Positions 14,609 to 63,869 of a stretch of DNA of 64,000 bases are shown here, in pieces. Location: positions 186,001 to 250,000 of IMG/VR virus record IMGVR_UViG_3300029893_000001. The stretch is one strand, 5' to 3'. A model generated the notes under the pieces. The model worked only from the letters and a program-made list of their open reading frames with translations, had not been told where the DNA came from and ran no database searches. Position 1 is the first letter of the stretch, and every line of letters begins with the position of its first letter. The translations under genes and the position numbers were made by a program.

Positions 14609-15385
14609 TCAACAACACTCTGAGTCAAAAGGAAGCGCAATAGCACGAAGAGCTTGAGCATGAAGAGCTAAACGAGATGGAATATACAGCCCGGAGTCTA
14701 CACGGACGTACGAAGCCCCTCGAATCTCCTCCTCATCGTCATCCTCTAACTGTTCTGGTTGATCGGTTTCTGTTGGGGTTTCTTTTGGCTCTTCACGAGG
14801 CTTTATCTTCGGAATTTTAGGTACTTCTCGAACTGCAGGCTCCTGCACAGCCCGTTCTTCTGGGGCCTCTTCGGACCACGAAGAGATTGCAACCGGAATT
14901 GCAGCGTACAAATGCTTACAAAGAGTTCCGATTCCGCGAGGATTGGTAAATCTGGCTGGGCGCCCGTTGCTGTAGATAATATCGGAACTTCCATAACGAG
15001 AAAGAGCCCACTCACACACATACCTAAAGTAGTTGCAAGAGCAGGAAACCCAGACGGGAGTCTCCGGCCCAGGACGTCCTGGAGCGACTTCTTTCGACCG
15101 AAGGCCAGGTTGCGGCTGACTCGCCCAACAGATGATTACTTTCTTGGGCTTGCCCCGCCTCATGGCTTTGCCAGGATACTGCACGGTGCACTGAACGCGG
15201 AAAAATTGGCGATAGACCGGGCCTAACGCAGAAAGCCTCCGATATTGAGAGGGAGCCTCCCAGTCAGAGGCCTTACCCACTGGACGAATATCCGTACAGC
15301 CACTGCTGTACCCAATTACATTAGGGGCCGTGTTCGCGAGCAAGACCCGCGGAGACAAAGGCCTGAGATTCCCTCGAACTGGCAT
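14609..15385 (-). CDS. SWIM-type zinc-finger protein
   Basis: WVSCSCNYF...TNP.GIGTLCKHL (CxC...CxH); acidic/Pro-rich tail. Start uncertain (15385 or 15466). Confidence 0.75.
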   Translation of the reverse strand: MPVRGNLRPLSPRVLLANTAPNVIGYSSGCTDIRPVGKASDWEAPSQYRRLSALGPVYRQFFRVQCTVQYPGKAMRRGKPKKVIICWASQPQPGLRSKEVAPGRPGPETPVWVSCSCNYFRYVCEWALSRYGSSDIIYSNGRPARFTNPRGIGTLCKHLYAAIPVAISSWSEEAPEERAVQEPAVREVPKIPKIKPREEPKETPTETDQPEQLEDDDEEEIRGASYVRVDSGLYIPSRLALHAQALRAIALPFDSECC

Positions 15386-15416
15386 CCCGCCCCAAATAAC
15401 CCGCGCTGAACAAGCT

Positions 15417-15719
15417 TCAGATTTCGGGAGACTCCTCGATCCTTTGAAGGATGGCGTCAAGAGCACCCGAGACTGCTACCCCAGCGAACGCGTAAGCTAC
15501 GAGCCCCCGGACGAAAGTAGCCCAATCCCCATGAAAAGGAACGAGGAGCAAATAGGTAATCCAGCCCGAATGAAATCCTACGCAATAAGCACAACTCAGT
15601 AAGTCGCAGAAGAACTTACTTCGGTCTGCAATCCATTGACGTGGCCGCGAAAAGAGTTTGGCGTCCTTAATGCCGAAGGTGATGCCGTACATAACCGCAA
15701 TTGTTAGGAAAAGGGTCAC
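15417..15719 (-). CDS. DUF1360-like small membrane protein
   Basis: Hydrophobic segments and LLSCAYCVGFHSGW motif. Confidence 0.6.
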   Translation of the reverse strand: MTLFLTIAVMYGITFGIKDAKLFSRPRQWIADRSKFFCDLLSCAYCVGFHSGWITYLLLVPFHGDWATFVRGLVAYAFAGVAVSGALDAILQRIEESPEI

Positions 15720-55130: not shown

Positions 55131-55771
55131 AACTCCGGCAGAACACCTTCGTGTTTGAGGTAGTTCAGAATAGTTGCAGATGCCTGCTCCCGAGAGAAGA
55201 ATCCTCCGCCCTGTTCTCGATGAACGAGATACCGCTCTCCCGCCCGCTCCCAGAGCCTAATTTGGTCAATGCCAATCTGGTCTGTTGCAATCCTCATCTT
55301 GAAGCGAACCATGACAACTGGATGTCTTTTGCACATCAAGACAAGACCAAACCAACTAGCAACCCCGTCAGCAACCTTAGTTTTGTGGATGTTAAGAACG
55401 ACGAATAAGCTTCTATCCCGCAAAGCCTGAAGAACTCTCTCATACGCAGTTTCATCTATGACCGTGATTCCAATTGTATCCGCAATAAATTTGGCCATAG
55501 GCAGAATGAATCGAGCCTCAGCCGTCTTTACTGGCGGAGGTACCTCCGGATACGCTTCCGGCGTTCTATAAGAGAACTCATACGTATCATCGGGTCCAAT
55601 GATATCAGGATCCGTATTGCCCATCTGAATAGGCTGGTTCGTAACTGGGTCATAAATCCTAGGATCCAGACGAGCCTGAGGGTCTTGGGCCAAACGCCCA
55701 GCCCGGATCAAATCCAAGACAGAGTTCTCCGAACCCGTTGGGGGAGCAGGACGCTCATCGCTTGTACTCAT
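55127..55771 (-). CDS. Hypothetical protein
   Basis: 214 aa, overlapping both neighbours. Confidence 0.65.
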   Translation of the reverse strand: MSTSDERPAPPTGSENSVLDLIRAGRLAQDPQARLDPRIYDPVTNQPIQMGNTDPDIIGPDDTYEFSYRTPEAYPEVPPPVKTAEARFILPMAKFIADTIGITVIDETAYERVLQALRDRSLFVVLNIHKTKVADGVASWFGLVLMCKRHPVVMVRFKMRIATDQIGIDQIRLWERAGERYLVHREQGGGFFSREQASATILNYLKHEGVLPEL

Positions 55772-56292
55772 GAATTCCCCTGAATGTACGTCCTTACGAA
55801 GGATCTCCCAACCTTAGCGGCTGACTTTCGAGTCGTGCAGCGGGTATACTCGTCCTGAGTCTCACGACGCAGGGTAAGACCAGTAAGTCGTGCACCACCG
55901 TTGCCATAACTGGCGTGCAGACTGAACACGCGCTCGCCTCTTACAAAGATCGCGAACGGGATCCAGCGTACCCGCAAGAATCCCCTCTCTCGACGAGTTT
56001 TCACGTCTAAGAAATCAAAGACGCAGTAAGCTCCAAGTGTCAACTGGTTCTCATCTTTAGAGGAGAGGTCATCCAGACACGAAAGAGGAACACCCACCTC
56101 AGACGCCAACTCTGTTGCCAGCGGTTTCACTGACTCTTGGAATCGGAGAGAGTGAATTCTGAATCTGGTCTCCTGAAAATCGATGAGACGACGACCGGTA
56201 TCAATCGATACGATGGGATTTGCTCCCAAAGTCAAAGTTACCGATCGTCGCTGCATCGATTCAGGCTCAACACTGTGAGATGTGGTGGACAT
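55768..56292 (-). CDS. Hypothetical protein
   Basis: 174 aa downstream of recA. Confidence 0.6.
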   Translation of the reverse strand: MSTTSHSVEPESMQRRSVTLTLGANPIVSIDTGRRLIDFQETRFRIHSLRFQESVKPLATELASEVGVPLSCLDDLSSKDENQLTLGAYCVFDFLDVKTRRERGFLRVRWIPFAIFVRGERVFSLHASYGNGGARLTGLTLRRETQDEYTRCTTRKSAAKVGRSFVRTYIQGNS

Positions 56293-56309
56293 TCCACAGC
56301 TTTTACAGG

Positions 56310-59796: not shown

Positions 59797-59798
59797 AC

Positions 59799-59831
59799 AA
59801 AAGAGGGGCGGTTGATTACCGCCCCTCTTTT
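59799..59831. terminator. Intrinsic terminator hairpin after the SSB gene
   Basis: aaaagaggggcggt-tgatt-accgcccctctttt; perfect 14-bp inverted repeat with A4/T4 ends. Confidence 0.85.
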
Positions 59832-59839
59832 ACATATGC

Positions 59840-60928
59840 TCAGAGATCTCCGAAATCGTCATCGAAGTCATCATCGTCCTCTACCGGCGGACGCTTCTTC
59901 TTCTTCGCCTTAGGCGGAGGAGAATCTTCCTCATCATCGTCATCGTCCTCTACCGGCGGACGCTTCTTTTTAGGTGGAAGCGAGTCTTCGTCGTCCTCGT
60001 CATCTACTGGACGCTTCTTCTTCGCCTTCGGCGGCGGAGGAGAATCCTCCTCCTCCTCGTCGTCGTCCTCGAAGTCGTCGTCCTCTACCGGCGCACGCTT
60101 CTTCTTCGCCTTCGGCGGCGGAGGAGAATCCTCCTCCTCGTCGTCCTCGAAGTCGTCATCGTTCACTGGCTTTCTCTTGGAAGGCTTGCCCGCCGAAGGC
60201 TTAGGAGACTCAAAATCATCCTCGTCATCATCTACTGGACGCTTTTTGGAGCCTTTTCTCGGAAGAGACTCTGTTTCCTCGTCATCCGATTTAGTATCGA
60301 AGTAGCCATGCCTCTTGAGGTCTTCACGAATCTTGTGAATGTCGGGCTCTTGATAGAACTCGTCAAACGAGATAAGCTCAAGAGACGTCTCCTCCTCGGA
60401 CAGAGGAGAGCGATCTCCTTTCTGGACCTGCCACTCTACACCGCCACGCTTCTTACTGCGCTGCTTCTGCAGATGGATATCGCACCCAAGCTTTGGGTGC
60501 GCGATGGACTTAGGCTCGCCTTTGACCATGTTCAGCTTCTTGAGGTCAAGGAGCTGTCGCATGACAGTAGGAGGGACATCCAGTGCTCGAATTGGATCCG
60601 CATCGCCACGATTCTGTGCAGTCCGGTCAATGACATTCATCATGTAACGAACACTAGGGCGCAGGCCCACTTCACAAGCAGGGCATCCTCCCTTTTTCGA
60701 AGAGGATTCGCTATCAGGATCCCAGTTCGCGCAGTCTACGGGATAGCGCTTCTTTTCGCCCGTCTTATTGACGAACTCGATCCAATGTTGTGCGTAACTG
60801 AATACGCCGCCCACGATCCGGAAGGGATACCATTCATCCATCTTGGGTAGCTCAGCTACCGAAATGTCTTCCTTCCAGTTTTTGTCGCGGGTACGAGGGT
60901 TTGTATCATCGAAATCTTTGAGTGCCAC
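59840..60928 (-). CDS. Single-stranded DNA-binding protein (gp32-like) with repetitive acidic/basic tail
   Basis: FRIVG...QHW...C...CPAC...YMMNVIDR...GCDI core with Zn ligands; ~150-aa D/E/K/P tail ending DFDDDFGDL. Confidence 0.8.
   Translation of the reverse strand: MALKDFDDTNPRTRDKNWKEDISVAELPKMDEWYPFRIVGGVFSYAQHWIEFVNKTGEKKRYPVDCANWDPDSESSSKKGGCPACEVGLRPSVRYMMNVIDRTAQNRGDADPIRALDVPPTVMRQLLDLKKLNMVKGEPKSIAHPKLGCDIHLQKQRSKKRGGVEWQVQKGDRSPLSEEETSLELISFDEFYQEPDIHKIREDLKRHGYFDTKSDDEETESLPRKGSKKRPVDDDEDDFESPKPSAGKPSKRKPVNDDDFEDDEEEDSPPPPKAKKKRAPVEDDDFEDDDEEEEDSPPPPKAKKKRPVDDEDDEDSLPPKKKRPPVEDDDDDEEDSPPPKAKKKKRPPVEDDDDFDDDFGDL
59843..60290 (-). repeat. Imperfect coding repeats (about 5-6 units) in the SSB tail
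   Basis: Units such as EEEDSPPPPKAKKKRxPVEDDD; nucleotide motifs tcctctaccggcg and cgcttcttcttcgcctt recur. Confidence 0.9.
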
Positions 60929-60992: not shown

Positions 60993-62225
60993 TTAGAGGG
61001 CAGATACCTGCCTAAGTCTTTCTGCCTTGACCTTTTGGGGGTCGAGCTTCTGAGAAACATACTCTGTTAGGCCATAGGCCAAACAGACTAGGTTCCGAAG
61101 GTTGTCAGGGAGCGAGTCAAGAAGGACTTTTACAGAATCAGAAGGATCATAATCAAGTGGGTCTGACTGTTCTTCTTGGGATTCAATGATAGAGGAAATA
61201 GGAGTTGAGGATCCATCTGGTTTGAGGGGGTAGTCGAGAGATCGAACCTGTGACGTCCGAACTGTACTATAGATAGCGTCTACATGGCTTCTCGAATACC
61301 CAGAAACACGAGAAAGTTCTTCAGTAGTCAGAGGACCAGACTGAGATTCTTGCTTTAGTCGAATAGCCTCTAACTTAGCGTAGTGTTGCCAGGTGTTCGA
61401 TGATACCCGGATCAAATTAGAGTCTTCTTTCAGGTAGTACAGCATACTTTGCCGTATCCACCACCGAGCGTGACCCACAAATCTCGCGTTTGAGACTTCG
61501 TCGTAAGACGAAATAGCCCGAAGCAAGCCGAAGCTTCCATTCTGGAAACAGTCGAGCGCGTGGTCCTCCGAAACAGCTTGGGCTTTCGCCTGCTTCAGGA
61601 TTACCCTTGAGTATGCGTTGAATACTCGTTCATAGATCTCTTGAAGTGCAGCTAAGCGTTCAGCAATATAGCGAACGATCCCAAAAGCTGTTCTCGGATC
61701 CAGGCGGCAATCCTGTTCTAAATAATGACACGCGGCATCCGCTGCGGACGCTTCCTCTAAGTCGTCGTTCAAATGAGCCAACAAACTTCGGTGGGAGGCT
61801 TCCTGGTACTGAGAAGCCTTAGAGCACCAGTCCTTCAAGAATTGTTCAAACACCATCCGAGTAAGAGGGAGGGCCAGAACAATATCTAGCTGGCGGTCTT
61901 TATCTCCGTCTAATGTGGCAGCCTGCAAGTCCATGCAAGCGCACAAAAAATCAGCCTCTCGCTGCTCCGGGTCCACCGGGACGTCCTTCACGGACCCATC
62001 GATAAAGGCGATCGATCTTCGATAGATTGCTTTATTGCGGTCTAGGTTGGAAGCTACTTCCGCCCCCAGAGCTATTACACCTAGTTGGATGTAATCATTT
62101 TCTCTCAACAGCAAACGAACGCAATCATAGACAAGCAAAGACGCTCGACTGAACAGGGGAAACAATTCTTCTTGGGTAAGCGTATCCCCTGAGTTGACAG
62201 TCTCGATCAACGTCCGCGCAGTCAT
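60993..62225 (-). CDS. Sigma70-family RNA polymerase sigma factor, region 4 degenerate/truncated
   Basis: Region 2 DCFQNGSFGLLRAISSYD...RFVGHARWWIRQSM; region 3 LIRV...T.EELS...SLDYP; start at the TGATG overlap 62225. Confidence 0.88.
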   Translation of the reverse strand: MTARTLIETVNSGDTLTQEELFPLFSRASLLVYDCVRLLLRENDYIQLGVIALGAEVASNLDRNKAIYRRSIAFIDGSVKDVPVDPEQREADFLCACMDLQAATLDGDKDRQLDIVLALPLTRMVFEQFLKDWCSKASQYQEASHRSLLAHLNDDLEEASAADAACHYLEQDCRLDPRTAFGIVRYIAERLAALQEIYERVFNAYSRVILKQAKAQAVSEDHALDCFQNGSFGLLRAISSYDEVSNARFVGHARWWIRQSMLYYLKEDSNLIRVSSNTWQHYAKLEAIRLKQESQSGPLTTEELSRVSGYSRSHVDAIYSTVRTSQVRSLDYPLKPDGSSTPISSIIESQEEQSDPLDYDPSDSVKVLLDSLPDNLRNLVCLAYGLTEYVSQKLDPQKVKAERLRQVSAL

Positions 62226-62686
62226 CAAGTTAGCTGCCTTAGGCGGTCGTTTATAGACACTCTGGGAGATTGCTGACGCAGTCGCTGCATCTCCGTTGAG
62301 TTCGTTGCAAGCAGAGTCTCGGCTAATTTGAGCAAGTGCGGGCATAGTCCTGGTTTCTGGAACCCCCTGAGTTTTTCAGGGATGTCTTCCGGTCCGACTC
62401 TCATGTCTGTGGCCCCCATAGTGTAGAGAGCAGGGGCACATCGTACCTTGAAGTACGCACAGGAACACGAAACTTTAGCGGACGCAGCCGGATCAATCTC
62501 CTCAGAATAAATCCTGATCACGGACTTACGCGGATCCTTTCCCCCGGAAATTACCGCAAGGAATTGGATAAAGTCCCCCAAGTTATCAGACTCTTTACGG
62601 GTTTTGAGGGCCTCAACCTTGTACTCCGTCTTAAAACGACGGCGGTCCGGCTGAGTAACGACCAAAAGCTGACTCAATGTAAGCAT
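62225..62686 (-). CDS. SWIM-type zinc-finger protein
   Basis: KVSCSCAYF...PGLCPHL; paralog of 14609..15385. Confidence 0.75.
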   Translation of the reverse strand: MLTLSQLLVVTQPDRRRFKTEYKVEALKTRKESDNLGDFIQFLAVISGGKDPRKSVIRIYSEEIDPAASAKVSCSCAYFKVRCAPALYTMGATDMRVGPEDIPEKLRGFQKPGLCPHLLKLAETLLATNSTEMQRLRQQSPRVSINDRLRQLT

Positions 62687-62925
62687 TAGATCGAAAACAC
62701 CTTGTTCAAAAGAGAAAGCACAGCCTGTAGCTTTCTAATCGCGAAGCGATTTCTCTGCGATTTCAACGCAAAGGAAATCTTCTCTACAGAAGTGTCATGA
62801 ACCAAAAACGCCAAGATCTGAGCCAGGTAGAAAATGTCTTCGCCCTCATCAAGGCCGTAGTTTTCTTTCAGGTACTTCCGAATCTCCTGAGCTGAAGCTC
62901 CGGTAATTCGATGAGACGTATTCAT
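62686..62925 (-). CDS. Hypothetical protein
   Basis: 79 aa; TAATG overlap with the SWIM gene. Confidence 0.55.
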   Translation of the reverse strand: MNTSHRITGASAQEIRKYLKENYGLDEGEDIFYLAQILAFLVHDTSVEKISFALKSQRNRFAIRKLQAVLSLLNKVFSI

Positions 62926-63052
62926 TACTAAGCCTCTTTGCGACCATGCGCTCGTAACAAACCAAGAGATTTGAATAGTTAGAGTACGGATCCAAGCGGA
63001 ACGCCTGAGCCGCCTTCTGATACCTAAGGTGGATGTCCTCTTCCTTTGTCAT
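62849..63052 (-). CDS. Hypothetical protein
   Basis: 67 aa; starts 2 nt after the DUF2400 stop but overlaps the next gene by 77 nt. Confidence 0.4.
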   Translation of the reverse strand: MTKEEDIHLRYQKAAQAFRLDPYSNYSNLLVCYERMVAKRLSNEYVSSNYRSFSSGDSEVPERKLRP

Positions 63053-63053
63053 G

Positions 63054-63869
63054 TTACAGTTCGTCCCAGGCCCCCATGGAAAAGAGCAAGAAGTCGTACT
63101 TCAAAGGGTCACGTGAATCAAGCTGAAGTAGACTATGGGTGATATCTTCGGCGCATCTCCAGGTGCTACCAGATCTTGCCGTCAATCCCAGCTTAAAACT
63201 CACCCTGCGGACGTGTGTGTCGAGTGGAACAATTAGCTTGTCCAAAGATATACCAGACCACAACCCTAAGTCTACCTCGTCTTTCCTGAACATCCATCTC
63301 ATCAACATGTTCAAGCGCTTACACGCCCCTCCCGCGGCAGGGTTTGGCAACAAGTAGGCAAACCCTGCCGACCCTCCTGAAGGAGCGCCACACCCAGAGA
63401 AGTCGAGGGTACGCAGAGTCCTCACAAAAGAGGTAAGTTGTGTTTTGGTCAAAGAAGGGGCAGTAGGGCAGGCATCCGCAACCAACACGCTCTCCAAAGA
63501 ACCAAAAACTTGAAGTACATGCTGCACAGAAAAGAGCAAGCACCTCAAATCCTCTGGCTTGTTGAATCTATAGCAAAACCAGTCAAAGCTTCTCTTATAC
63601 CCGCCACTCATCACAAAGTCATAGGGAGAAGAACCCATCTCCTGAAGTATCTTAGACACCACAGGAATGAACACCTTCCTCTGCCCGTAAGCAAGCGATG
63701 AAGCAATCAGTGCGACGACCTCTGCATCGTGAGGAGAATGGGCATAAGGATAAACAAGTCCAACAGGGTCCTCCTTCTCAGCGTGAAGGCGGAGTGACGT
63801 CCCCAAAGAGGCGAGGCGCCCGTCGAGAAGATCTCGAAGGCGCCCCAATTGCGTCTGATTCAGCTTCAT
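63054..63869 (-). CDS. TIGR02757/DUF2400 family protein (HhH-GPD glycosylase-like)
   Basis: DP...D.E..ALIASSLAYG, YRF, ACKRLNM.MRWM.R.D.VDLGLW, LIVPLDTHV, DPLKYDF.LF motifs. Confidence 0.88.
   Translation of the reverse strand: MKLNQTQLGRLRDLLDGRLASLGTSLRLHAEKEDPVGLVYPYAHSPHDAEVVALIASSLAYGQRKVFIPVVSKILQEMGSSPYDFVMSGGYKRSFDWFCYRFNKPEDLRCLLFSVQHVLQVFGSLESVLVADACPTAPSLTKTQLTSFVRTLRTLDFSGCGAPSGGSAGFAYLLPNPAAGGACKRLNMLMRWMFRKDEVDLGLWSGISLDKLIVPLDTHVRRVSFKLGLTARSGSTWRCAEDITHSLLQLDSRDPLKYDFLLFSMGAWDEL

What the first reader, a model, noticed from the sequence alone, without database searches (positions are those of the whole stretch)
60993..62686. Sigma factor with a crippled -35 recognition domain, translationally coupled to a SWIM zinc-finger gene
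Seen: region 2 is RpoD-like (WWIRQ kept, Y430-equivalent changed to H). Region 4 is about 4 residues shorter in the first HTH helix and the protein ends 4 residues after ERLRQ. The upstream SWIM gene overlaps its start (TGATG). Known: T4 gp55 lacks region 4 and relies on co-activator gp33. Inference: the SWIM protein could be a co-factor of a -35-independent phage sigma, which would give a role to a phage SWIM family for which I know no assigned function.
Basis: partly seen in the sequence, partly recalled or inferred. Interest (0 to 1): 0.65.

Follow-up and report, generated by a model that had tools for sequence, protein, structure and literature searches.

The report
Huge-phage sigma with truncated region 4
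A 392-kb phage from subsurface metagenomes carries one RpoD-like sigma factor whose -35-reading domain is cut short in its whole family, and a small SWIM zinc-finger gene is almost always fused onto its start, which gives a testable lead on how such phages redirect host RNA polymerase without a -35 element.

Summary
Window 60993-62225(-) encodes a 410-aa sigma-70-family protein. Region 2 is intact (WWIRQ kept, Y430-equivalent is H252). The first helix of the region 4.2 HTH is 4 residues shorter, and the protein stops 4 residues after ERLRQ, about 20 residues short of E. coli sigma70. Its ATG shares a base with the stop (TGATG) of a 153-aa gene with an invariant CxC...CxH motif and a SWIM-like predicted fold.

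The truncation is not a local accident. About 34 relatives from huge phages, and more distant members, all end 1-24 residues after E/H-x-x-R/K-Q. The SWIM-then-sigma junction (-4 to +5 nt) is kept in 10 of 11 loci examined. A distant SWIM relative lies directly upstream of a further-reduced sigma in cultured Vibrio phage GR7B.

I detected no second sigma, gp55, gp33 or phage RNA polymerase in the genome. Promoter-like motifs are abundant and none has a conserved -35. TGTAAA is shared by all seven sigma-bearing genomes tested.

The cofactor idea is still untested. The SWIM family also occurs in phages with their own polymerase, a SWIM paralog sits among virion genes, and the -35 contact residues E/R/Q are conserved. 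Verdict: a new variant of a known kind, with moderate to high interest.

The parts
60993..62225 (-). Sigma factor gene, 410 aa (stop codon 60993-60995). Architecture like a primary sigma: 1.2/NCR-like N-terminus, region 2, region 3, 3.2 linker, 4.1, and a truncated 4.2.
61425..61622 (-). Region 2 (residues 202-267), including H252 (Y430-equivalent) and W255-W256-I-R-Q259.
   Evidence: Pfam PF04542 above its cut-off; alignment to E. coli sigma70
61374..61406 (-). Region 3.0 helix V-S-S-N-T-W-Q-H-Y-A-K (residues 274-284). It is invariant or nearly so in the family and differs from sigma70 I-P-V-H-M-I-E-T-I-N-K: the extended -10 readers H455 and E458 are replaced by N and Q.
60996..61133 (-). Region 4 remnant (residues 365-410). 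The 4.1 helices are present, the first HTH helix is reduced to one turn, and the recognition helix ends 4 residues after E402-R-L-R405-Q406.
62223..62227 (-). TGATG junction: the SWIM stop (TGA) and the sigma start (ATG) share one base.
   Evidence: similar junctions of -4 to +5 nt in 10 of 11 loci
62225..62686 (-). SWIM-type zinc-finger protein, 153 aa: an N-terminal four-stranded sheet plus CxC-x38-CxH, with a conserved C-terminal tail I-S/N-D-R-L-K/R that is predicted disordered.
62336..62467 (-). Segment holding the putative zinc ligands C74, C76, C115 and H117.
   Evidence: Invariant in 23 sequences
62686..62925 (-). Conserved 79-aa protein (motif N-R-F-x-x-R-K-L). Its stop overlaps the SWIM start by one base. 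It is the first gene of the tightly packed run 79 aa, SWIM, sigma.
   Evidence: weak sub-threshold winged-helix/HTH hits only
63054..63869 (-). DUF2400 gene, upstream neighbour conserved in most relatives.
   Evidence: Pfam E 1.6e-62; synteny
59840..60928 (-). SSB-like gene, the conserved downstream neighbour of sigma. Sigma followed by SSB is also seen in Sen-NF and Peetri.
   Evidence: phrog_15004 E 1.5e-19
14609..15466 (-). Second SWIM paralog, 285 aa, among virion genes. It is closer than the sigma-linked copy to the cultured-phage family phrog_18980.
   Evidence: conserved in G001-G003

Best explanation
This is the only sigma factor I could detect in a huge phage (392 kb, subsurface metagenomes) that has no detectable RNA polymerase of its own.

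Shown:
- It is a sigma-70-family protein with an intact core-binding and -10-reading half (regions 2 and 3, the 3.2 linker and 4.1).
- Its region 4.2 is shortened in the whole family.
- It is co-transcribed with, and start/stop-overlapped by, a SWIM zinc-finger gene.
- This pairing is old.

Inferred:
- The sigma loads onto host core polymerase and starts transcription at single-element phage promoters that need no -35 hexamer.
- The best candidate promoter is (C)TGTAAA, which resembles the T4 late TATAAATA and often sits 8-9 nt before an ATG, suggesting leaderless or very short-leader mRNAs.
- A second candidate class is GAACCCnGCy-GATAnTA.
- The conserved E-R-x-R-Q stub of region 4 probably serves to anchor on the beta flap, make unspecific DNA contact or hold a partner, rather than to read a -35 hexamer.

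Inferred from gene order only: the SWIM protein, made in step with sigma, acts on the same holoenzyme. The likeliest role is an accessory subunit that supplies what the missing C-terminus of region 4 normally does (a gp33-like role). Less likely, it is a zinc-dependent regulator of sigma.
For: Sigma identity and anatomy:
- Family and profile hits.
- Whole-chain fold match to E. coli sigma70.
- Region 4 modelled without a full first HTH helix.

The truncation is family-wide: 8 and 30 aligned members and distant members L088, L089, L091 and L092 all end 1-24 aa after the R/K-Q.

No other transcription machinery detected in G000:
- Second Sigma70_r2 or any r4.
- gp55 phrog_234 and gp33 phrog_254.
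- T7-type RNAP and beta/beta' domains.

Linkage:
- 8 of 8 IMG/VR loci keep 79 aa, SWIM, sigma, SSB in that order.
- Eight further contigs appear to hold both genes, judged by equal contig lengths.
- Distant SWIM representatives P0077 and P0087 overlap a sigma-family gene by 4 nt. P0113 is 74 nt upstream of one. P0094 is 1.3 kb from one.
- In Vibrio phage GR7B the SWIM relative is directly upstream of its only annotated sigma.

Promoters:
- 71 copies of GAACCCnGCyGATAnTA, all on the gene strand, with at most 0.4 bit of information upstream of about -24.
- Related variants occur in G001, G003 and G002.
- TGTAAA ranks 0-8 among orientation-biased hexamers in non-coding upstream DNA of all six huge-phage genomes and of GR7B, with 7-16-fold enrichment.
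- CTGTAAA is followed by an ATG-ORF at 8-9 nt in about 20% of sites, against 4% for permuted words.
- No upstream conservation around these sites.
- No excess of sigma70-type promoters at the operon.
Against: - No experiment or RNA data links any motif to this sigma. No RNA runs exist for it.
- The 71-copy motif lies mostly among small genes that look early, where host sigma would be expected.
- Its upstream extension differs between phages whose sigma region 3.0 helix is identical.
- About ten copies are palindromes, which hints at a nucleic-acid structure.
- TGTAAA lacks a conserved T at the -7 position expected for a canonical region 2.
- E402, R405 and Q406 (sigma70 E585, R588, Q589) are conserved, so some sequence reading by region 4 is not excluded.
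- The SWIM family is also found in phages without sigma, and as a paralog elsewhere in this genome.
Confidence: 0.55

Rival explanations
1. The SWIM gene is only a neighbour. It belongs to the conserved replication/recombination module (primase, exonuclease, SSB, RecA, topoisomerase, SNF2 helicase) and acts on DNA or DNA-metabolism proteins, not on transcription. The tight junction reflects compact phage operons.
For: - In Sen-NF, JA29 and Peetri, 1-7 genes lie between the SWIM gene and sigma, and the block is flanked by primase, exonuclease and SSB.
- The fold also matches the SWIM module of bacterial SNF2-associated helicases (TM 0.52).
- SWIM-type relatives occur in BcepSauron, which uses its own RNAP.
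- A conserved paralog lies among virion genes.
- One distant representative shows no sigma in its 3.7-kb contig.
Against: Direct adjacency with overlap or a spacer of at most 5 nt survives down to profile E-values of 1e-18 for SWIM and very low sigma identity, and recurs in GR7B. Other neighbours (DUF2400, thioredoxin-like, topoisomerase versus RecA) change between loci.
Confidence: 0.3
2. The SWIM protein is a zinc-dependent anti-sigma or timing factor. It would be made 1:1 with sigma and hold it inactive until a signal (redox state, replication, or a later phage protein) releases it.
For: Translational coupling of sigma with a small Zn-binding partner is the hallmark of sigma/anti-sigma pairs (established knowledge of ZAS pairs such as RsrA-SigR). 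Cys/His ligands are invariant. The conserved disordered C-terminal tail could be a docking peptide.
Against: The ZAS signature HxxxCxxC is absent: the protein has a single His, H117 (sequence). The gene order is partner-then-sigma, the reverse of most anti-sigma pairs. No similarity to anti-sigma domains appeared in Pfam, PHROGs or NCBIfam.
Confidence: 0.1
3. Region 4 is short but working. The retained E-R-x-R-Q helix still reads an upstream element, so the promoters are two-part after all, with an unusual or degenerate upstream element.
For: Positions equal to sigma70 E585, R588 and Q589 are invariant in the close clade, and R/K-Q is kept in distant members. The region 4 model has moderate confidence, pLDDT 77-79.
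Against: No information above 0.4 bit between -45 and -24 in 71 sites, and none in the G003 or TGTAAA logos. The first HTH helix is reduced to one turn, and the C-terminal half of the recognition helix is missing. In L089 the Glu is His.
Confidence: 0.15

Closest known systems
Primary (group 1/2) sigma-70 factors such as E. coli RpoD and M. tuberculosis SigA
   Same: Same order of regions. The profile aligns family positions 107-409 to sigma70 residues 278-593. W433, W434 and Q437 are kept. Region 3 and the 3.2 linker are present. The whole-chain fold match gives E 2e-8.
   Different: About 20 C-terminal residues are missing (sigma70 594-613). The HTH is 4 residues shorter. Pfam r3 and r4 models are not matched. 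The extended -10 readers H455 and E458 are replaced by N and Q. NCBIfam scores lie far below every curated cut-off.
T4 gp55 with co-activator gp33 (late transcription)
   Same: A phage sigma that works, or is inferred to work, without -35 recognition. The candidate promoter TGTAAA(T) resembles the T4 late TATAAATA. A small co-expressed protein could take the place of region 4 on the beta flap.
   Different: There is no sequence relation: phrog_234 and phrog_254 find nothing in G000. This sigma keeps regions 3 and 4.1 and half of 4.2. SWIM is a zinc finger, whereas gp33 is a helical protein. No interaction has been shown.
phrog_17569 sigma with phrog_18980 protein of cultured jumbo phages (Vibrio GR7B/GR11A, P. 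putida Peetri group, Salmonella Sen-NF, Dickeya JA29)
   Same: The N-terminal domain and region 2 are homologous (E 2e-9 and 5e-8 to the family profile). The SWIM relative has the same CxC...GA(A/S)D...CxH motif. The same SWIM, sigma, SSB neighbourhood is present.
   Different: Those sigmas are 311-345 aa with no detectable region 3 or 4.2. The SWIM gene is often several genes away. The closer homolog of phrog_18980 in this genome is the paralog at 14609-15466, not the sigma-linked copy.
SWIM zinc fingers (PF04434; ZSWIM8, MuDR/FAR1, bacterial SNF2-associated SWIM)
   Same: CxCxnCxH ligand pattern. Predicted strands, CxC, then a helix beginning at CxH. The best solved-structure match is the SWIM region of ZSWIM8.
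   Different: The spacer of 38 residues carries an extra helix. The Pfam model is not matched. The protein is a stand-alone 150-aa module with its own N-terminal sheet, found almost only in phages.

Membership tests
Sigma-70 family | Region 2 (core binding, -10 recognition and melting residues) | tested here: met
   PF04542 31.6 bits against a 24-bit cut-off. W255-W256-I-R-Q259 aligns to sigma70 433-437.
Sigma-70 family | Region 3 and the 3.2 linker | tested here: inconclusive
   Pfam Sigma70_r3 is not matched. However, profile alignments to SigA and RpoD run through regions 3.0-3.2, and the model has the helices.
Sigma-70 family | Complete region 4 HTH (PF04545) | tested here: not met
   No PF04545 hit on the protein or at its genomic place. 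There is a 4-aa deletion and the end corresponds to sigma70 K593. The first HTH helix is modelled as one turn.
Primary sigma (RpoD, group 1) | Score above curated RpoD/SigA family cut-offs | tested here: not met
   Best NCBIfam hit 61.5 bits against a 384.5-bit cut-off.
T4 gp55-type late sigma | Homology to gp55 (phrog_234) | tested here: not met
   The sigma matches phrog_351, not phrog_234. No phrog_234 match anywhere in G000.
T4 gp33-type co-activator | Homology to gp33 (phrog_254) | tested here: not met
   No match in G000. The control genomes did not ring either, so absence is not proven.
T4 gp33-type co-activator | Binding to the beta-flap tip in place of region 4 | not testable with these tools
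   Needs biochemistry or a solved structure.
SWIM zinc finger (PF04434) | CxCxnCxH ligand signature | tested here: met
   C74, C76, C115 and H117 are invariant in 23 sequences. The spacer is 38 residues, longer than I recall as typical (own knowledge, unverified).
SWIM zinc finger (PF04434) | Match to the Pfam model | tested here: not met
   No hit at E up to 0.1.
SWIM zinc finger (PF04434) | SWIM fold | tested here: inconclusive
   ZSWIM8 is the top hit but only Z 5.1. BFVD proteins annotated as SWIM-type score E 5e-5 to 8e-5. An Atlas cluster with 12% PF04434 membership gives TM 0.69.
ZAS anti-sigma factors | HxxxCxxC zinc motif | tested here: not met
   The protein has a single His (H117), which follows C115 (sequence).

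The most novel reading that the evidence does not exclude
The small SWIM protein is a new kind of sigma-associated subunit. It would bind the truncated region 4 and/or the beta flap and let a widespread lineage of jumbo and huge phage sigmas, including those of cultured Vibrio and Pseudomonas phages, start transcription at single-element TGTAAA promoters. That would be a zinc-finger counterpart of T4 gp33, and would give the phage SWIM family its first function.
Probability: 0.25. Interest if true: 0.8.

Novelty: new variant of a known kind. Interest (0 to 1): 0.6.

Why it matters
Huge phages without their own polymerase must reprogram host RNA polymerase, and how they do it is known in detail for only a few model phages. 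This locus defines a large, uncharacterised sigma lineage in which the -35-reading module has been progressively lost:
- complete in cellular sigmas;
- half present in this family;
- not detectable in cultured relatives.

The lineage also has a persistently linked zinc-finger gene and a shared candidate promoter word. The full-text searches I ran found no paper linking SWIM proteins to sigma factors.

Relatives exist in culturable Vibrio coralliilyticus and Pseudomonas putida phages, so the idea can be tested directly at the bench.

Tried and rejected
- **Co-folding of sigma and SWIM.** No verdict (score 0.11, mark 0.32). I do not use it as evidence either way.
- **Split region 4.** I asked whether the 79-aa upstream protein (motif R-K-L) is the detached C-terminal half of region 4.2. 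The hhalign probability against canonical region 4 is 0.5%. Rejected.
- **General hairpin at the 71-copy motif.** Stem lengths are no greater than in an upstream-side control (5.6 against 5.4). It is therefore not a general feature, although about ten copies are clear palindromes.
- **Exact search for the G000 motif in relatives.** It found nothing, because the relatives carry variant extensions. These were found later by k-mer counting.
- **Foldseek of the SWIM model against PDB.** Nothing significant.
- **Partial contigs G002, G004 and G005.** Their over-represented 10-mers were coding tandem repeats.
- **Vibrio phage 2.275.O sigma.** No SWIM neighbour, and it belongs to a different sigma family.
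- **RNA evidence.** Only DNA runs from subsurface, rock and landfill metagenomes hold the sequence, so I did not use read laying.
- **Literature.** Nothing links SWIM proteins with sigma factors.
Full report
**Context.** The window is G000:C1:186001-250000 of a 392,328-bp IMG/VR virus record rated complete. Nearly all genes in the window lie on the minus strand. Near-identical DNA occurs only in subsurface and rock metagenome runs, and no RNA run holds it. The window holds virion genes (tail-fibre-like proteins and an M23 peptidase protein of 1480 aa), an SNF2 helicase, and a replication block that contains the finding.

**Check of the observation.**
- Gene coordinates: the SWIM-like ORF is 62225..62686(-) and the sigma ORF ends at 60993.
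- Junction: on the minus strand it reads AACTTGATGACT, so TGA and ATG share a base. Relatives begin at the matching Met, which makes the protein 410 aa.
- Pfam finds only Sigma70_r2, above its cut-off. PHROGs places the protein in phrog_351, 'RNA polymerase sigma factor'. NCBIfam RpoD/SigA/RpoS models align over residues 200-407 but score far below their cut-offs.
- A profile of 30 family members finds solved SigA and RpoD chains at E 2e-20 to 1e-16.
- The alignment to E. coli sigma70, taken from the MG1655 record, covers family positions 107-409 and sigma70 residues 278-593. It puts H252 opposite Y430 and keeps W433, W434 and Q437. It replaces the extended -10 readers H455 and E458 with N and Q. 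It needs four residues of deletion between FGI and ERIRQ, and it ends at about K593.
- The window protein ends KAERLRQVSAL. It therefore lacks the sigma70 residues ALRKLRHPSRSEVLRSFLDD.
- The AlphaFold2 model (mean pLDDT 77, about 78 in region 4) shows helices 365-370 and 374-383, a single turn at 387-389, and a last helix 396-409. The HTH is therefore not modelled as complete. The whole chain matches E. coli sigma70 by Foldseek.

**The truncation is a family trait.**
- Seven IMG/VR loci (40-68% identity) and about 34 database clusters form the family. Many of these lie on contigs of 265-424 kb.
- All members stop 1-20 residues after E-R/K-x-R-Q, with unconserved tails.
- More distant members found through their SWIM neighbours end the same way: FERAKQILAATVI, WHRIRQTTARHLIAEA, VECARQTGGLGR, and KERLRQ followed by 24 residues.
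- The positions equal to sigma70 E585, R588 and Q589 are invariant in the close clade. The stub is therefore under selection, and 'crippled' is an interpretation, not a finding.

**The SWIM protein.**
- No Pfam, PHROGs or NCBIfam hit.
- C74, C76, C115 and H117 are invariant.
- The model is confident (pLDDT 86, pTM 0.78). It has a four-stranded sheet, CxC at the end of the last strand, a helix, a long loop, and CxH at the start of the next helix.
- Foldseek against PDB gives nothing significant. VIA-align ranks ZSWIM8's SWIM region first, at Z 5.1.
- The ESM Atlas gives viral clusters at TM 0.69-0.75, one partly carrying PF04434, and a bacterial SNF2_assoc+SWIM cluster at TM 0.52.
- BFVD gives 'SWIM-type domain' proteins of BcepSauron and Motura.
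- A profile search of 1.8 billion representatives finds 532 relatives. Nearly all are stand-alone proteins of 125-220 aa, and none is an evident fusion to sigma.

**Linkage.**
- All eight close loci, the window included, keep the order: small protein of about 80 aa, SWIM, sigma, SSB-like, thioredoxin-like.
- The SWIM-sigma junction ranges from a 4-nt overlap to a 5-nt spacer.
- Eight further contigs appear to hold both genes, judged by identical 'longest contig' lengths.
- I sampled distant SWIM representatives:
  - P0077 and P0087 overlap a family sigma by 4 nt.
  - P0113 lies 74 nt upstream of one.
  - P0094 lies 1.3 kb from one in divergent orientation.
  - P0176 shows none in a 3.7-kb contig.
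  - Two contigs were too short to judge.
- Among cultured phages, the SWIM relative of Vibrio phage GR7B lies directly upstream of its sigma. In P. putida phage Peetri one gene intervenes. In Salmonella Sen-NF and Dickeya JA29 three to seven genes intervene, with SSB following sigma.
- Those sigmas (phrog_17569) are homologous to the N-terminal domain and region 2 of this family. They are only 311-345 aa, and no region 3 or 4.2 is detectable in them.

**Complications.**
- G000 has a second SWIM paralog at window 14609-15466, among virion genes. It is the closer match to the cultured-phage family phrog_18980, and it is conserved in relatives.
- SWIM-type relatives exist in phages that encode their own polymerase.
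- The wider SWIM family therefore cannot be solely a sigma cofactor.

**Other transcription machinery.** In G000 I found no second Sigma70_r2 and no region 4 above cut-off. I also found no gp55, gp33, T7-type RNAP or beta/beta' domains. For PF00940 and phrog_254 the control genomes did not ring either, so those two absences are weak. GR7B also lacks a gp55 match. Iyer et al. 2021 (PMC7824862) describe RNAP-less jumbo phages with minimal or RpoD-like sigmas plus gp33, and do not mention SWIM.

**Promoter-like motifs** (my own gene calls and k-mer statistics on the laid genome).
- *Class A.* (Y)GAACCCnGCyGATAnTA occurs 71 times, always on the gene strand. It lies mostly at 1-148 kb and 340-392 kb, often 10-70 nt upstream of an RBS or start codon. 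No column upstream of about -24 carries more than 0.4 bit.
  - G003 has CCAACCCTGGCCATACTAG (about 30 copies). G001 has AAAGTCCGACGATAsTA (about 10). G002 has GGGACACTGGCATACTA.
  - The GATAnT part has the A and T spacing of a -10 element.
  - The extension varies between phages whose region 3.0 helix is identical.
  - About ten copies are palindromes of the form GCyGAT-AnTA-ATCrGC. This is unexplained.
- *Class C.* CTGTAAA is strongly strand-biased: 31/35, 44/48 and 37/50 copies on the main gene strand in G000, G001 and G003.
  - It is followed by an ATG-ORF at 8-9 nt in about 20% of sites, against 4% for permuted words.
  - TGTAAA is 7-16-fold enriched in gene-oriented non-coding upstream DNA.
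  - TGTAAA ranks 0-8 among all orientation-biased hexamers in each of six huge-phage genomes (GC 37-57%) and in the first 50 kb of GR7B. In GR7B it often follows terminators, as yTGTAAAT.
  - No upstream conservation is seen around these sites.
- *Class B.* TTATCT is similarly enriched in five of the six huge-phage genomes but not in GR7B.
- Sigma70-type two-hexamer promoters are not enriched at the operon.

TGTAAA is the one word shared by every genome carrying this sigma lineage, across very different base composition and hosts. I therefore take it as the likeliest cognate promoter. This is an inference, not a demonstration.

**Mechanism, with status.**
- Shown: a sigma-70-family protein with truncated 4.2; conserved start/stop coupling to a SWIM-type protein; no other sigma or RNAP detected; abundant -35-less promoter-like motifs.
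- Inferred:
  - The sigma directs host core polymerase to single-element promoters.
  - The region 4 stub serves flap anchoring or unspecific contact.
  - The SWIM protein works on the same holoenzyme.
- I put the sigma function at about 0.8, assignment to TGTAAA at about 0.45, and a direct SWIM-sigma or SWIM-RNAP partnership at about 0.35.

**Comparison and novelty.** In what it may do, the system resembles T4 gp55/gp33, but it is not a member of those families. It belongs to the sigma-70 family on the evidence of region 2, but fails the region 4 test. I rate it a new variant of a known kind.

Noticed in passing
G000:C1, 71 sites between 919 and 392220 (minus strand). The nearest to the window are 181003 and 184097. 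None lies inside the window.: A highly conserved 17-nt promoter-like motif, (Y)GAACCCnGCyGATAnTA, always on the gene strand and without any conserved -35. Related phages carry variants: G003 CCAACCCTGGCCATACTAG, G001 AAAGTCCGACGATAsTA, and G002 GGGACACTGGCATACTA four times in tandem near 110.0-110.1 kb.
   Followed up: yes
G000:C1, for example 362490, 364208, 364690, 369940, 381249, 30558 and 349986: About ten copies of that motif are near-perfect palindromes (GCyGAT-AnTA-ATCrGC) with apparently compensatory or wobble changes. One copy at 919 forms an 18-bp stem in the RNA fold. Overall, stem length is no greater than in controls. The meaning is unknown: RNA hairpin, DNA structure, or duplicated cassettes.
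   Followed up: partly
window 56302-56308 (G000 242308); also inside the sigma gene at window 61129-61135: CTGTAAA sits 9 nt before the ATG of ORF 55768-56292. The same word lies within the conserved D-S-V-K codons of the sigma gene in G000, G001 and G003, about 140 nt before the sigma stop. It could be an internal promoter for the SSB gene, or a coincidence of coding.
   Followed up: partly
window 14609-15466 (-): A second SWIM-type protein (285 aa) lies among virion genes. It is 59% identical over 49 aa to the GR7B SWIM relative and is conserved in G001-G003.
   Followed up: yes
window 59840-60928 (-): The SSB-like protein (phrog_15004) has a long C-terminal tail of acidic runs alternating with SPPPPKAKKKR repeats. 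Relatives have similar low-complexity tails ending in a Cys-rich motif (CF..C.SCP.K..C).
   Followed up: no
window 59797-59839: A GC-rich hairpin with a T run (AAAAGAGGGGCGG...CCGCCCCTCTTTT) between the SSB-like and thioredoxin-like genes looks like an intrinsic terminator. The simple scan did not list it.
   Followed up: no
window 62686-63052 (-): Two small overlapping ORFs (67 aa and 79 aa) lie upstream of the SWIM gene. The 79-aa protein is conserved in all relatives (N-R-F-x-x-R-K-L) and shows only weak, sub-threshold winged-helix hits. It is not a detached region 4 (hhalign probability 0.5%).
   Followed up: yes
window 63054-63869 (-): A DUF2400 protein (E 1.6e-62) is a conserved upstream neighbour of the cassette in most relatives. 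Its function is unknown.
   Followed up: no
G000:C1 about 179.6-180.6 kb, 306.5 kb and 365-370 kb: tRNA-like sequences (GGTTCGAATCC arms) in intergenic DNA indicate several phage tRNA genes outside the window. ARAGORN found none inside the window.
   Followed up: no
L094 (GR7B 2257-2384): A cluster of direct and inverted repeats (GGTGGGGTATCGAAAATTAAGACCTCCCCATCG...) lies in a 360-bp intergenic gap of Vibrio phage GR7B. It may be an origin or a regulatory array.
   Followed up: no
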